A DNA stretch of 64,000 nt from Auanema rhodensis (lineage: Eukaryota; Animalia; Nematoda): NCBI GenBank assembly GCA_964057225.1, contig OZ059895.1, positions 19,096,001 to 19,160,000 of the forward strand, read 5' to 3'. The notes below the pieces were generated by a model. The model did no database searches, was not told the DNA's origin, and was given only the letters and a program-made list of their open reading frames with translations. Numbering within the stretch: position 1 is the stretch's first letter; each line of letters starts with the position of its first letter. Shown here piece by piece: positions 59,716-64,000 of the stretch. The translations under genes were made by a program, and so were the position numbers.

Positions 59716-60126
59716 TTTAAGCCAATTATTGAATAAATTACTCCTAAACCATTATATTTGTTATTATTTACATTTTTTTTCATTAATTTTTTTTTGGAAA
59801 AAGTAATAATGCTATTATGAAATGCTAATATGTGCAAATGTATTGGTTAGTTATTCTGAATCTTGAACATATATAGTGTACAACCGTTCTACATATTTCA
59901 TCTTTAAATAATAATAATTCTACCCATATGGCATGACGTCAGTTATTACTTTTTTTTAGTTATTACAATTCTTAAAATATTTTTTTATATAAAAGGAAGT
60001 TTTATAATCTTTATATCCTGTTTTCTTGAAAATGAATTTATTAAGCATAGTTTATTTCAATAAATAAATGATTAAATGCAAAGCACAATATGGTCTATGG
60101 ACATAGTTATAGGGTACAGAGGTACA

Positions 60127-60129
<3 letters not shown>

Positions 60130-60161
<32 letters not shown>
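60130..60161. repeat. (AT)n microsatellite
   Basis: AT run. Confidence 0.9.
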
Positions 60162-60164
<3 letters not shown>

Positions 60165-61077
60165 TGTACTGTAATGGGATAGTCACAAACAGAATACATA
60201 AATTCTTAAAAACGAAATATATAGGAACGATTGTTTCTACACACAAGGACAAGTACTCTAACCTGCACTCCAAGCGGAGGTCCCAACTTACTCTCTTTTC
60301 TCATCTTCTCGAAACAAGCAATTTCTGGAGATGATAAAAGAGAGCAAATGCCAAACAAAAATAATTTAAGTCATTATATTCATGAGAGCAAAATTGTAAA
60401 TTGCCAGAATTTTAAGGACACGATGGAGCGTGAAGAGTTACCCGGTTCTTTGTTATTACGAAAAATTAAAATAATGGAAAGTTTTGATTATTACAGAAGA
60501 AATAAGTTAGAGTTAGTTCTTTTGAGCATCGTAAGCTATGATTAGCCAAATTAGGTTTAAACTATAAGTGAAAAGATAAAAAATTGTATATATTTTTTTT
60601 CTAGCTTATGATACTCATGAGAGAAGGTTAGGTTGATTTGTTTCTACAATAATAGTCGATAAGTCAATCTATATAAGATGAATCGTCAAGCAGGCACGGA
60701 GAGTAACTGTTTGAGCGAATCGAACCCTGAAGCTACATGTGAATATTCAGAAGGATACATCGATTATTACGTTATGAAGAATTGCAAGCAGGGCAAAAGA
60801 AACATCTATAGTGGAAGATTGATCTGATGGACATCTGCTCGAGAAACAGATATCCAATACAGACCATGTACGCAACACCAGATGAACTTCAACAGATAAA
60901 AGAAGCTTAAATACAAGGACTCTTTAAAGATAAAGAAAAAAAGAAGGAGAGAGAGAGAGTGTGTTTGAACGAACAAAATTTTTTGAAAAGAGGGAAATTA
61001 GGAGAGGCAAGAGGATTTTCGGAATTATAAAAAAAGAGAAAAATGTTGGAAACAATGAAAACACATCTGAAGCAAGT

Positions 61078-62442
61078 TTAGTTGATGGTACGCAGTCCAC
61101 TTCGTGCACAGTACATGACGACATTCCAGTTCGAAAGACAGACGAGGTCGTTCTTCTCAACGGAGTTGATACGATCACCGGATGGGGCCACGTTACACAT
61201 ACGTAGGCATCTGAAATCATTAATCGTTAGATATTTAGCAGAAGTAATCATTGTTTTACTTTTGTAATAAAGAGATTGCAAAAAAAGTGAAAAAGAACTA
61301 TACCTGTCTCCGACTCCTAAATCCGAATTGGACATGCCAAGGAACTCACAACATGGTCTGTTATCTCGGTTTTGATTAGCACAATAGAGAATGTTAGAGA
61401 GGTACTGCAAGCAAATAATCCAGTTAGATCATGCAAGGAATTTTTTTTTACCTTAAGATCACATCCATCTTGTTGAACAGCAGCAATCAAGGTTTCTGCG
61501 GCAACGTGCTCACGATGCTCGTAGGAGCAAAGAGAATGACAATTCGCAGGAACCTGTCAAGAATTATATTAGAATTCGTAAAACGAGTGAAATATTACAT
61601 GCTGTTGACAGCAAGATAAGAAAAGGTCATCAACGGTTTTTCGGGATAGACATGGAGAATATGGAGGACGGCTACGTTCAGTACCACATTCAGATGTCAA
61701 ATCCGCGTCAGTGATCTCGGTAATTGGGAATTCATGGGATAGCATTTTGGCATCTCCGCCTAAAACATAGCTTCGTTACGGTGATTGATTTGATTATTTA
61801 AATGCAATGATTTTTTTAGTTTAAAGATGATATACGCACTTGTTGGTGCACGGCGGACCTCCTTTTCAACAAATTTCTCTTCAGCTGGAGCTTCGGCTGG
61901 GTTTGGAACGCGACCACGTGGAGTAAACTTTGGCTTCACCTGTAGAAATATAAATGCAAATAAGAAAAATATAAAAAATTGCGCACAAGCTCAGATTTCT
62001 TGTCGTCTTTTTCCTCTTTATCTTCTATTGTTTCATATTTATTAAGTTTATGTGGACATTTCTCCATAACATAATCGATGCATCCGGATAAACATTTCTC
62101 TGAAAAAAGATTGAAAATATAAATTGGCTGCCAAGAATATTCAGTTTATACCTAAAACACGTTCAGTACAGCATAATACTTTCGGTAAAGAATGGCACTC
62201 AGGCAATTTTATGTCACCACGAACAATAGGGGATACACATATAATGAGAAGAGATAATGTGAGAACAGTTGAAGACCTGAAAAGAAGTTGAATGAAAAAT
62301 GTGATTTTGAGATTGATGATGAAGAGAAAAAAATGATTGTGTGCAATCTATTTTTCTATTTTGTAGAGAGAAAGACTATTCTATATGTGAATAGCATAAA
62401 AGGGTTAAGAAAACATTTTGAAACTTACAAATTCAAATTCAT
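61078..62442 (-). CDS. Secreted DB-module Cys-rich protein
   Basis: Signal peptide MNLNL|SSTVLTLSLLIICVSPIVRG; CHSLPKVLCCTERVLEKCLSGC; DB module FLSCCQQHVPANCHSLCSYE...CDLKYLSNILYCANQNRDNRPCCEFLG...DRCLRMC...CLSNWNVVMYCARSG. Checked exon junctions are in phase. Confidence 0.9.
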
Positions 62443-63666
62443 TTTCGTGAGAATAATCCTCCTCCACCAGAGCTGGACGACGTGCAACCACAACCTTTAT
62501 TATCGAAGAATCCGGAGTTGGAGAATGAATCGAAGGGGCGGTCCTGAATGTTAAAATAGAAAATTTTTCAGTTTTAATTGAATAGTGTTAAAAGATGGGA
62601 GAGCACTGATAGGTCGAATGAAAGATAATTAGGGTAGGAGGTCAACTGAAAGTGAGAACAATAGAATTTGATTTCGTTTTCTCTGCTTATAGCTGATAAT
62701 CCTCTGATAATTCATCTTTTAATTAATTAATGATAAAAATTATGTAGCTATTCGGATTATCTTTCTTTGGAACTAGGATATTATGACATGAGAATCATCT
62801 CTGCGCAATCACAAAGCAGACTCTCAATAAGCATGTCTTATTTTTTACTCCTCATTTTTGCTTTTATTTCTTATTTTATGTTTAATTATAATATACCAAT
62901 CTGTTTTAAGTTTATAATATTTGTTGTAATTTCTTACATTTTGTCTGTTTCCTCCAAATAATCCTCCGTTGCCGTGGTTGTCAAATGAAGCATCACCTCC
63001 TACACCTCCGACTCCGTGAGTTGACCTTAAATATAAGAAATATTAAAAACTTAGCATAGTTACAAAGTTCTTTATGAATGTTTTGAAACAAAAAGATTTT
63101 AATTTAATTTCCCTATGAATGAGTATTGCTAATTAACTTTGCTATTTTGCATCTCTTGATAAATGTTGAAAAAGTCTTTAATATTGCCATTCAAAAATTA
63201 CTTTGAGAATTCACAAAGTAAATTAATTTTCGATAAATATGAACCTTTTCACATCTTTTCTGTTGCATGAACTTCGAGATATGAGAATGAAAAAAAAACT
63301 ATGATTAGCGATAGAACGAGAGAACTTAAGCGAATGAGAAACATGATAGGATCGTTGGAGAGATATATACAATTGCTAATCAAATAGGGATAGAGATTAA
63401 TGACAACCGTTCGTTACGCATTATCGCAATGAAATAAATTCAATTTTCATTTTGTTTAACGACGCTTAAGAACCTAGACGTATGTTTCGAATAAATAGCT
63501 AATATGACTTGTCTTAATTTGTTATATATATATATATATATATATATTAAAAGTGAACTAACCAATTTCCAGATCCAGTACCGACCGCAAATGTGGAGGC
63601 TCCAGTCTGGGGTTGCAAGTCAGATAATGCAAGAGCGGCACGTGGACATGGGCTATCAGGAAGCAT
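62439..63666 (-). CDS. 98-aa Gly-rich protein, 3 exons (63666-63563, 63025-62938, 62543-62439); stop overlaps the DB-gene start
   Basis: MLPDSPCPRAALALSDLQPQTGASTFAVGTGSGNW|STHGVGGVGGDASFDNHGNGGLFGGNRQN|DRPFDSFSNSGFFDNKGCGCTSSSSGGGGLFSRK*. Canonical donors and acceptors, matching phases, GC-rich exons, and only this frame is open in exon 2. Confidence 0.75.
63523..63547. repeat. (TA)n microsatellite
   Basis: TA run in the first intron of the Gly-rich ORF. Confidence 0.9.
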
Positions 63667-64000
63667 AATGTTTAATTGGATGCAGTAGAATAGCTTATTC
63701 GCTTGTTTGTTTATTTATGATATATTAGCTGATAAGCGTATGCGCCTTCTAGTTCAGCTAGCAGTTGTTTTGGTAACGATTTGAAGTTGATAACGGCGGC
63801 TAAGACGTAGACGATATTCAGCCGACTGCTTGGACTTGGACTGACGGACTGACTGACTGAGTTGTCGGACAATTTGAACTTGTTGACGATTTGTAGAAAG
63901 TAATCAGATAAGAGTAATGTGAGTGTCTTTTTGTGTCTATAATACAGTCAAATAATTTGTTCGTTTCCTTGTTTAGGTGAACCAAGAATAAGGTCAAGGT

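What the first reader, a model, noticed from the sequence alone, without database searches (positions are those of the whole stretch)
61078..63666. Candidate dicistronic unit: spliced 98-aa Gly-rich ORF whose stop overlaps (ATGA) the start of a secreted DB-module gene in a shared exon
Seen in sequence (minus strand): exon 62543-62429 reads ...TCA CGA AAA TGA ATTTGAATTT|GTAAG. The TGA (62441-62439) ends the three-exon Gly-rich ORF. The ATG one base earlier (62442-62440, -1 frame) starts MNLNL, which splices in phase to a signal-peptide exon of the DB-module protein. The DB frame is closed upstream within that exon (CGA TAA), so this is not a single ORF. At least three AUGs precede the DB start on the cis-spliced mRNA, making leaky scanning unattractive. 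Established knowledge: AUGA overlaps mark coupled termination-reinitiation in bacteria and some RNA viruses and are rare in animal nuclear genes. Inference, three possible mechanisms: (a) stop-start reinitiation, although no calicivirus-type UGGGA TURBS core is visible in this exon; (b) a -1 slip on A_AAA at the stop, giving a fusion; (c) the 62544 acceptor used either for cis-splicing (Gly-rich protein) or SL trans-splicing (DB protein). Option (c) fits the DB ATG being the first ATG in that exon.
Basis: partly seen in the sequence, partly recalled or inferred. Interest (0 to 1): 0.9.

Follow-up and report, generated by a model that had tools for sequence, protein, structure and literature searches.

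The report
Two-protein gene sharing one exon
In this roundworm a small, previously unnamed protein gene runs into the first exon of a secreted-protein gene and stops exactly on its start signal; the layout is kept across many roundworms and gives a testable case of how one animal gene makes two unrelated proteins.

Summary
Observation confirmed. On the minus strand a three-exon, 98-codon ORF (63666-62439) ends in a TGA that overlaps the ATG (62442) of an eight-exon, 282-aa protein with a signal peptide and a DB module. Both lie on one spliced 2.35-kb RNA contig in four public runs, with no indel. The small ORF is a real gene. Against Auanema sp. JU1783 it shows 50 synonymous and 2 non-synonymous changes (dN/dS 0.005). 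Homologues sit directly upstream of the DB orthologue in clade III, IV and V nematodes. The ATGA overlap recurs in two Auanema, Ancylostoma, Strongyloides and an unnamed rhabditid. Other lineages have AUG-free spacers of 5-181 nt. A frameshift or readthrough fusion is rejected because the relative frames differ between lineages. Leaky scanning is rejected because ORF1 is not AUG-poor. One result separates the remaining readings. The shared exon is AUG-free in every lineage through synonymous codon choice: 0 of 16 possible out-of-frame ATGs are realised, against 11 of 21 in exons 1-2 (P=4e-4). That is what a scanned leader predicts. I favour (0.5) a second, shorter DB mRNA starting at the shared exon's acceptor, by SL trans-splicing or an intronic promoter. 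Stop-start reinitiation (0.3) is not excluded. SL use could not be tested at read level.

The parts
63880..64000 (-). Promoter-proximal block and 5' end of the long transcript. About 95% identical to Auanema sp. JU1783, while most of the leader is not conserved.
   Evidence: Pairwise alignment. RNA contigs begin at 63926/63922.
63667..63926 (-). 260-nt AUG-free 5' leader of the long mRNA
63563..63666 (-). ORF1 exon 1: start ATG 63666-63664, conserved motif MLPDSP.PRAALALSDLQ
62938..63025 (-). ORF1 exon 2 (NWSTHGVGG..., GGLFGG). 18 differences from JU1783, all at third codon positions.
62544..62668 (-). Conserved non-coding block at the 3' end of intron 2, about 85% identical to JU1783 while other intron DNA is unalignable. 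It carries TAATTA-like and GATA-like motifs, folds no better than shuffles and has no Rfam match. Candidate internal promoter or enhancer.
62429..62543 (-). Shared exon: the last 34 codons of ORF1 plus the first 14 nt of the DB ORF. It holds no AUG between its acceptor and the DB AUG.
62439..62442 (-). ATGA stop-start overlap: DB ATG at 62442-62440, ORF1 TGA at 62441-62439. Context is acgaaaAUGA.
   Evidence: The same overlap occurs in L007, L008, L010 and L012.
62152..62276 (-). DB exon 2: signal peptide and the LPEC..PKVLCCTERVL motif. Synonymous sites are nearly frozen (pS 0.03).
61078..62099 (-). DB exons 3-8: 62099-61987, 61939-61840, 61759-61599, 61553-61452, 61404-61304 and 61210-61078, with stop TAA at 61080-61078. 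The DB module lies in the last four exons.
60030..61077 (-). 3' UTR of about 1 kb with AATAAA at 60056 and 60042. RNA contigs stop at the (TA)n run at about 60131-60160.

Best explanation
This is an ancient two-gene locus of rhabditid nematodes. Gene 1 (ORF1) encodes a conserved protein of about 90-110 aa. It is Gly/Ser-rich and, by eye, lacks a signal peptide, so it is probably disordered and cytosolic. ORF1 has no 3' end of its own. Its two private exons are cis-spliced into the leader exon of gene 2, a secreted DB-module protein. ORF1 reads through that leader and stops at the UGA formed by the DB start (A-AUG-A). The long spliced mRNA therefore carries both ORFs and serves ORF1. This part is shown by the structure, its presence in RNA contigs and the selection on ORF1. 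The next step is inferred. The DB protein is made mainly from a second, shorter mRNA whose 5' end is created at the acceptor of the shared exon (62544|62543). This could happen by spliced-leader trans-splicing of the same precursor, or of a transcript started at a promoter in the conserved 3' end of intron 2. On that mRNA the 101-nt, AUG-free shared exon is an ordinary scanned leader and the DB AUG is the first AUG. Some reinitiation at AUGA on the long mRNA may add to this.
For: Structure and transcript. ORF1 is a real protein. Window vs JU1783 shows 52 differences, 49 at third positions, dN/dS 0.005, against 5.8 and 1.4 in the other two frames. In Caenorhabditis there are 31 synonymous and 0 non-synonymous changes, or dN/dS 0.12-0.15. 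Eleven species share 24 invariant columns. Standalone annotated homologues exist in Bursaphelenchus, Aphelenchoides, Panagrolaimus and Caenorhabditis. Linkage to the DB gene is seen in every locus fetched. Both ORFs lie on one spliced RNA contig in five lineages. ORF1 has no poly(A) signal after its stop in any species. Evidence for the shorter DB mRNA: the exon leading to the DB AUG has no AUG in any lineage, while ORF1 exons 1-2 carry 1-5, as expected by chance. At codon junctions where a synonymous choice could create an out-of-frame ATG, 11 of 21 are realised in exons 1-2 and 0 of 16 in the shared exon (Fisher P=4e-4). In AT-rich Strongyloides the rarer C-ending codons are used exactly where a T would make ATG (P(0)=0.01). 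In B. xylophilus the single inner AUG lies 12 nt upstream of that exon's acceptor, and the following 161 nt are AUG-free. A 125-nt conserved block lies directly upstream of the acceptor in Auanema. Established knowledge: about 70% of C. elegans mRNAs are SL trans-spliced, and internal SL1 acceptors fed by intronic promoters are common.
Against: No read with a spliced leader, and no contig starting at 62543, was seen. Only assembled contigs were served, and they cannot show short SL tips. The only assembled RNA form in five lineages is the two-ORF form. A donor lies upstream (exon 2), and that normally favours cis- over trans-splicing. The ATGA overlap is kept in clades IV and V, and spacers are only 5-20 nt in three more lineages. 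This model does not require such tightness. It explains the overlap only as a frozen by-product of A-AUG-A read in the +1 frame. The AUG-avoidance statistic pools lineages whose sites are partly homologous.
Confidence: 0.5

Rival explanations
1. True translational coupling. The long mRNA is the only template. Ribosomes translate ORF1, terminate at UGA 62441-62439, and a fraction of 40S subunits restart at the overlapping AUG 62442 (termination-reinitiation) to make the DB protein.
For: The ATGA overlap is conserved in two Auanema, Ancylostoma ceylanicum, Strongyloides ratti and an unnamed rhabditid, that is in clades IV and V. Spacers are 5, 9-10 and 20 nt in Aphelenchoides, Caenorhabditis and an ascarid-like genome, and all spacers are AUG-free. 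Only the two-ORF RNA form was assembled, and at high k-mer depth. ORF1's AUG has a purine at -3 and is followed by more AUGs, so scanning cannot reach the DB AUG on this mRNA. The 22 nt up to ATGAA are identical between Auanema and Ancylostoma. The RNA around the restart site is less structured than shuffles, z +1 to +2.2 in three species.
Against: It does not predict the AUG-free shared exon, because translating ribosomes ignore out-of-frame AUGs. No UGGGA (TURBS motif 1) lies within 120 nt upstream in any of 10 sequences. Established knowledge: reinitiation after an ORF of about 100 codons is normally very inefficient in eukaryotes without a tethering element. Two lineages have 86- and 181-nt spacers. 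The 22-nt identity is not shared by L010 or Strongyloides.
Confidence: 0.3
2. An ordinary SL2-type nematode operon. ORF1 mRNA is cleaved and polyadenylated, and the DB mRNA is SL2 trans-spliced in an intercistronic region. The joined contigs would then be unprocessed precursor.
For: Co-transcription and deeply conserved linkage resemble conserved operons. In C. brenneri the intron between the ORF1 stop and the DB AUG is about 100 nt and ends 1 nt before the AUG. Spacers of 86-181 nt occur in two lineages.
Against: The window has no intercistronic region (4-nt overlap). The DB AUG lies upstream of an intron that is cis-spliced in the contigs. No AATAAA follows the ORF1 stop in any species. The Caenorhabditis intron is removed in cis in an RNA contig.
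Confidence: 0.05
3. Recoding fusion. A -1 slip on A-AAA at the stop, or readthrough elsewhere, joins ORF1 to the DB protein, as many public gene models suggest.
For: In the window the DB frame is -1 relative to ORF1, and CGA-AAA-UGA allows tRNA-Lys to re-pair. Fused models exist for more than 10 species.
Against: The frame offset of DB relative to ORF1 is 2, 0, 1 or 2 in different lineages, with spacers from -4 to 181 nt, so no single recoding event is conserved. The fused models use different ad hoc splices, or read the shared exon in a non-conserved frame. A fusion would bury the signal peptide. There is no canonical X_XXY_YYZ heptamer and no stable downstream structure.
Confidence: 0.02
4. 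ORF1 is only a long regulatory upstream ORF that throttles DB translation, and its peptide has no function of its own. In a variant of this reading, the DB AUG is reached by leaky scanning.
For: ORF1 sits in the leader of the DB mRNA and captures scanning ribosomes.
Against: The whole 98-aa sequence is under strong purifying selection, and its motifs are conserved from clade III to clade V. ORF1 is not depleted of AUGs, which argues against leaky scanning.
Confidence: 0.05

Closest known systems
Nematode operons resolved by SL2 trans-splicing (C. elegans type; conservation reviewed in PMC1657053)
   Same: Two unrelated genes are transcribed together from one upstream promoter. The linkage is conserved across Rhabditida.
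   Different: There is no intercistronic region and no 3'-end signal for the upstream gene. The upstream ORF ends inside the downstream gene's first exon, and an intron downstream of the DB start is cis-spliced on the joint RNA.
SL1-type operons, and internal SL1 acceptors fed by alternative or intronic promoters in C. elegans (own knowledge)
   Same: There is no spacer. One acceptor could take part in either cis- or trans-splicing. Processing for one product excludes the other.
   Different: Here the upstream gene borrows the downstream gene's leader exon as coding sequence, and uses the whole downstream mRNA as its 3' UTR. SL use is not shown.
Viral termination-reinitiation: calicivirus VP1/VP2 (PMC2793014) and influenza B M1/BM2 UAAUG (PMC3035654)
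   Same: Stop and start codons overlap (AUGA), after a long upstream ORF.
   Different: There is no UGGGA/TURBS motif upstream. This is a cellular, spliced nuclear gene, and dependence on upstream translation is untested.
Animal bicistronic loci such as SNURF-SNRPN, CERS1-GDF1 and Drosophila stoned A/B (own knowledge)
   Same: A small conserved upstream ORF and a larger unrelated downstream ORF lie on one mature mRNA.
   Different: Those loci have spacers and no trans-splicing option. Here there is a 4-nt overlap, a shared exon and a plausible second mRNA.
Green-algal polycistronic mRNAs translated by leaky scanning (PMC7896298, PMC11291117)
   Same: One capped mRNA carries two ORFs.
   Different: In the algae the upstream ORFs are AUG-poor with weak starts. 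Here ORF1 has a good start and a normal AUG content.

Membership tests
DB module proteins (Pfam PF01682) | Match to the DB profile above the gathering score (25 bits) | tested here: met
   Single window exons score 20 and 14.8 bits on profile positions 37-60 and 63-96. The spliced protein could not be passed by reference. Full-length orthologues P0112 and P0065, 71% and 63% identical to the window protein, score 53 and 55 bits over profile 1-96.
DB module proteins (Pfam PF01682) | Secreted: N-terminal signal peptide | tested here: inconclusive
   MNLNLSSTVLTLSLLIICVSPIVRG has the n-h-c layout by eye. No predictor was available.
Termination-reinitiation of the calicivirus/influenza B type | Overlapping or adjacent stop and start codons | tested here: met
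   ATGA at 62442-62439, conserved in four other species.
Termination-reinitiation of the calicivirus/influenza B type | TURBS motif 1 (UGGGA) about 40-90 nt upstream of the restart site | tested here: not met
   No TGGGA within 120 nt upstream of the DB AUG in any of 10 sequences.
Termination-reinitiation of the calicivirus/influenza B type | Downstream translation depends on translation and termination of the upstream ORF | not testable with these tools
   Needs reporters or ribosome profiling.
SL2-type nematode operon | Upstream gene has its own poly(A) signal, followed by an intercistronic region of about 100 nt | tested here: not met
   There is a 4-nt overlap. No AATAAA lies between the ORF1 stop and the DB start or in intron 3. 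The only AATAAA near by lies inside ORF1 coding sequence, 59 nt before the DB AUG.
SL2-type nematode operon | Downstream mRNA carries SL2 | not testable with these tools
Alternative cis/trans use of one acceptor, or an internal SL1 acceptor | Consensus 3' splice site preceded by an outron or promoter, with an AUG-free leader to the first AUG | tested here: met
   The acceptor is ttttaacattcag|G at 62544. A conserved 125-nt block lies upstream. The 101-nt leader is AUG-free, with selection against AUG.
Alternative cis/trans use of one acceptor, or an internal SL1 acceptor | Reads joining the spliced leader to the exon | not testable with these tools
Programmed -1 ribosomal frameshift | Slippery heptamer X_XXY_YYZ with a downstream stimulatory structure, and a conserved frame relation | tested here: not met
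   There is no heptamer. MFE z-scores downstream are positive. The frame relation varies between lineages.

The most novel reading that the evidence does not exclude
The long mRNA is a genuine two-protein messenger. After finishing the 98-aa ORF, ribosomes restart at the overlapping AUGA without any viral-type TURBS. This stop-start coupling would then have been kept since the common ancestor of clade IV and V nematodes. That would make it a natural, genetically tractable case of termination-reinitiation after a long ORF in an animal nuclear gene. The frozen synonymous sites in the first ~75 DB codons might be part of the restart signal.
Probability: 0.3. Interest if true: 0.85.

Novelty: new variant of a known kind. 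Interest (0 to 1): 0.62.

Why it matters
1. It defines a conserved nematode small-protein family (ORF1). The family has no Pfam entry and is missing, truncated or wrongly fused to the DB protein in the public gene models of more than ten species. These include Strongyloides ratti, Ancylostoma ceylanicum, Nippostrongylus, Toxocara, Steinernema and several Caenorhabditis.

2. It shows a gene layout that standard models of nematode gene expression do not cover. An upstream gene uses the leader exon and the entire mRNA of its downstream neighbour. This layout has been stable for a very long time.

3. It offers a clean experimental choice between two mechanisms, a dual cis/trans acceptor or stop-start reinitiation, in species with transgenesis.

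4. Earlier notes of this scan list several other stop-start or shared-exon pairs in the same genome. The AUG-avoidance test used here could be applied to all of them.

Tried and rejected
- The window's spliced proteins have no reference, and I did not type them in. Pfam on single exons gave only sub-threshold DB hits. I used DB exon 5 (53 aa) for the one exhaustive phmmer job.
- P0010 was not on record for a locus look-up.
- ORF1 gave no Pfam family (one weak Nucleoporin_FG hit at 16.5 bits) and no usable protein-atlas hit.
- Rfam on 60000-64000 found only TA-repeat noise.
- The conserved intron block is not a structured RNA (z 0.44).
- I looked for a stable RNA structure near the restart site. 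The region is less structured than shuffles.
- TURBS motif: absent.
- Leaky scanning: ORF1 is not AUG-depleted.
- Frameshift or readthrough fusion: frames are not conserved.
- Assembly indel: excluded by RNA contigs and by four other species.
- Literature searches for this locus, for the ORF1 motif, for Auanema trans-splicing and for nematode stop-start bicistrons found nothing specific.
- I could not identify a C. elegans orthologue by name. It was absent from the lists, which are incomplete by design.
- The 8-mer TCACTTTC is shared by Auanema and Caenorhabditis in intron 2. Its chance level is about 0.05, so I did not rely on it.
- An SL remnant at the 5' end of the window contigs could not be decided.
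Full report
**1. What is in the sequence**

Read on the minus strand, three exons with canonical GT..AG borders run 63666-63563, 63025-62938 and 62543-62439. They translate to a 98-aa Gly/Ser-rich ORF that ends CGA AAA TGA. The ATG one base earlier (62442-62440) opens a second frame. It runs 14 nt to a GTAAGT donor, then through seven more exons: 62276-62152, 62099-61987, 61939-61840, 61759-61599, 61553-61452, 61404-61304 and 61210-61078. The product is a 282-aa protein with a signal-peptide-like N-terminus. Its last exons hit the Pfam DB module, and its full-length orthologues pass the DB gathering score.

The DB frame has two stops earlier in the shared exon, so the two ORFs cannot be one. 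There is no in-frame Met after the ATG at 62442 until well past the signal peptide, so the DB start must lie in the shared exon.

**2. Transcript evidence**

Laid on 60600-64000, each holds a single contig of about 2342 nt with no mismatch or gap in the shared exon. Each contig skips every predicted intron and runs from 63926/63922 through both ORFs to below 60600. My spliced model from 63926 to the (TA)n run at about 60134 is 2346 nt, exactly the length of the X1 record.

The tool labels the runs 'RNA?' as a guess. The spliced structure shows the material derives from RNA.

There are limits. These are de Bruijn contigs, so linkage over several junctions is not single-molecule proof, and depth is one figure per contig. 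A 22-nt spliced-leader tip at an internal acceptor would be clipped, so the contigs cannot exclude a trans-spliced isoform. The 63563|63025 joint row was dropped at a TA repeat and is inferred from the contiguous record positions.

On this RNA the 260-nt leader has no AUG. The first AUG is ORF1's (A at -3). Three more AUGs follow before the DB AUG, including aaaAUGA at the exon 2/3 junction.

**3. The small ORF is a real, old gene**

A phmmer search with DB exon 5 returned orthologues. Several were about 100 aa too long. Their N-termini are homologues of ORF1.

One of them, from Auanema sp. JU1783, matches the window's ORF1 exactly through residue 86. I infer that the window comes from an Auanema or a very near relative (lineage).

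Comparing the two ORF1 genes (locus L007) gives 52 nucleotide differences, 49 of them at third codon positions. That is 50 synonymous and 2 non-synonymous changes, dN/dS 0.005. The same alignment read in the other two frames gives 5.8 and 1.4.

In Caenorhabditis the picture is the same. One pair shows 31 synonymous and 0 non-synonymous differences, and dN/dS is 0.12-0.15 against C. nigoni.

Standalone ORF1 proteins are annotated in these genera:
- Bursaphelenchus
- Aphelenchoides
- Panagrolaimus
- Caenorhabditis
- Angiostrongylus

Eleven species share 24 invariant columns: M, LP, PR, LALSDL, WST, GVGG and GLF. ORF1 has no Pfam family and no usable protein-atlas hit. By eye it has no signal peptide.

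**4. The linkage, and often the overlap, are conserved**

In every locus fetched, ORF1 lies directly upstream of the DB orthologue on the same strand.

| Species or locus | ORF1 stop to DB start on spliced RNA |
|---|---|
| Window Auanema | ATGA overlap (-4) |
| Auanema sp. JU1783 | ATGA overlap (-4) |
| Ancylostoma ceylanicum | ATGA overlap (-4); same 22 nt up to ATGAA as Auanema |
| Unnamed rhabditid RNA contig L010 | ATGA overlap (-4) |
| Strongyloides ratti | ATGA overlap (-4) |
| Aphelenchoides avenae | 5 nt |
| Caenorhabditis | 9-10 nt; the genomic intron inside the spacer is removed in cis in RNA contig L009 |
| Ascarid-like genome L013 | 20 nt |
| B. xylophilus | 86-89 nt |
| RNA contig L011 | 181 nt |

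All spacers are AUG-free. An intron 7-14 nt after the ORF1 stop is shared by clades III, IV (Strongyloides) and V. Spliced RNA contigs carrying both ORFs exist in five lineages. No AATAAA follows the ORF1 stop anywhere. ORF1 therefore never has its own 3' end and must be translated from an mRNA that also contains the DB ORF.

**5. Mechanisms excluded**

- *Fusion by frameshift or readthrough.* The DB frame relative to ORF1 is 2, 0, 1 or 2 in different lineages. The public 'fusion' models reach one ORF by different ad hoc splices. Some read the shared exon in a frame whose peptide is not conserved.
- *Leaky scanning on the long mRNA.* ORF1's start has a purine at -3 in all species. ORF1 carries as many AUGs as codon shuffles predict.
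- *Standard SL2 operon.* The window has no intercistronic region and no poly(A) signal.
- *Assembly error.* It is excluded by the RNA contigs and by the other species.

**6. Choosing between a second mRNA and reinitiation**

The AUGs inside ORF1 are not evenly spread. Exons 1-2 hold 1-5 per species, matching synonymous-resampling expectations. The exon that leads to the DB AUG holds none in any lineage. P(0) per lineage is 0.15-0.66, and 0.01 in AT-rich S. ratti.

I counted codon junctions where a synonymous choice could create an out-of-frame ATG. In exons 1-2, 11 of 21 are realised. In the shared exon, 0 of 16 are realised (Fisher one-sided P = 4e-4, seven lineages). There are 6 in-frame Met codons in exons 1-2 and none in the shared exon.

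In S. ratti the rarer AAC and TAC codons are used exactly where AAT or TAT would make ATG, while AAT and GAT are used elsewhere. Gly before Cys is GGT or GGC, never GGA, in the six lineages read by eye. In B. xylophilus the single inner AUG sits 12 nt upstream of the last acceptor, and the following 161 nt are AUG-free.

Avoidance of AUG is the signature of sequence that 40S subunits scan. Ribosomes that are translating ORF1 ignore out-of-frame AUGs, so reinitiation does not predict this pattern. An mRNA whose 5' end lies at the shared exon's acceptor does predict it.

The last 125 nt of intron 2 fit that reading. They are about 85% identical between the two Auanema species, although synonymous sites are saturated and the other intron DNA cannot be aligned. 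The block is unstructured and matches no Rfam family. It may be a promoter or enhancer, but that is inference.

For reinitiation speak the deep conservation of ATGA and of very short spacers, the absence of any other assembled RNA form, and the weakly structured RNA around the restart site (z +1 to +2.2). Against it, there is no UGGGA motif. Reinitiation after about 100 codons is also generally inefficient (established knowledge).

The ATGA can also be read as a by-product. The preferred nematode start context A-AUG-A contains UGA in the +1 frame, so any ORF entering the leader in that frame ends there. Once ORF1's C-terminal GLF.RK became functional, the arrangement was frozen.

I put 0.5 on the second-mRNA model, 0.3 on reinitiation as the main route, and the rest on minor rivals. 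The two main models are not mutually exclusive.

**7. Comparison with known systems and novelty**

The locus shares co-transcription and conserved linkage with nematode operons (PMC1657053). It fails their defining spacer and 3'-end features. It shares the stop-start overlap with viral termination-reinitiation (PMC2793014, PMC3035654) but fails the TURBS test. It resembles animal bicistronic loci such as SNURF-SNRPN (own knowledge) but adds a shared exon and a trans-splicing option.

My literature searches found no description of this locus or of the ORF1 family. I rate it a new variant of a known kind.

Earlier notes of this scan list several other stop-start or shared-exon pairs in the same genome. 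I did not test them and they are not evidence here. They suggest the layout may be recurrent.

**8. Unexplained**

Synonymous sites in the first ~75 DB codons are almost frozen within Auanema. pS is 0.03 and 0.16 in DB exons 2 and 3, against 0.67-1.0 in DB exons 5-7. The same holds within Caenorhabditis: 3 of 60 and 10 of 60 third-position mismatches, against about 45% further on. The frozen nucleotides differ between the two genera, and intron 3 between the frozen exons is not conserved. Neither model explains this.

Noticed in passing
window 61987-62276 (minus); L007 5115-5401; L009 337-560: Synonymous sites in the first ~75 codons of the DB ORF are nearly frozen within Auanema (pS 0.03 and 0.16) and within Caenorhabditis. 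The rest of the gene and ORF1 are saturated. The frozen sequence differs between the genera, and the region is less structured than shuffles.
   Followed up: partly
window 62544-62668 (minus): A 125-nt block at the 3' end of intron 2 is conserved with Auanema sp. JU1783. It carries TAATTA-like and GATA-like motifs. The 8-mer TCACTTTC also occurs in the homologous intron of three Caenorhabditis species (chance about 0.05).
   Followed up: partly
public proteins P0054, P0066, P0055, P0070, P0077, P0063, P0079, P0045, P0039/P0040, P0053, P0076, P0075: Gene models in more than ten nematode genomes wrongly fuse ORF1 to the DB protein. They skip part of ORF1, read the shared exon in the wrong frame, or read ORF1 itself out of frame (C. 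brenneri, C. sp. 36, C. japonica).
   Followed up: yes
L003 6254-6480 (Aphelenchoides avenae): The annotated DB gene starts at an internal Met. An in-frame ATG 5 nt after the ORF1 stop adds a signal-peptide-like N-terminus and is the likelier start.
   Followed up: partly
L013 3925-4020 (GCA_900617985.1): The DB copy of this ascarid-like genome has an in-frame TGA inside the conserved LLCCT motif. It is a possible pseudogene or an assembly error.
   Followed up: no
L002 1-10 vs L001 4840-4850 (B. xylophilus): The two-ORF RNA contig begins TGAG just where the genome has an acceptor (ctatttcag|). This is consistent with the tail of SL1 on the long mRNA, but it rests on one discordant base only.
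   Followed up: partly
window 62496-62501 (minus): An AATAAA hexamer lies inside ORF1 coding sequence (GAT AAT AAA), 59 nt before the DB AUG, in both Auanema species only. The RNA contigs run through it.
   Followed up: no
window 63513-63558 and 60131-60160: (TA)n microsatellites lie in intron 1 and in the 3' UTR. The second ends the RNA contigs and gives spurious weak miRNA hits in Rfam.
   Followed up: yes
L012 3095-3104, L010 311-320, L004 6690-6702: A pyrimidine tract followed by AG, resembling a 3' splice site, lies 3 nt before the DB AUG in S. ratti and L010, and just before the ORF1 stop in Caenorhabditis. The S. ratti public model uses it as an acceptor. Auanema and Ancylostoma have CG there instead.
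   Followed up: partly
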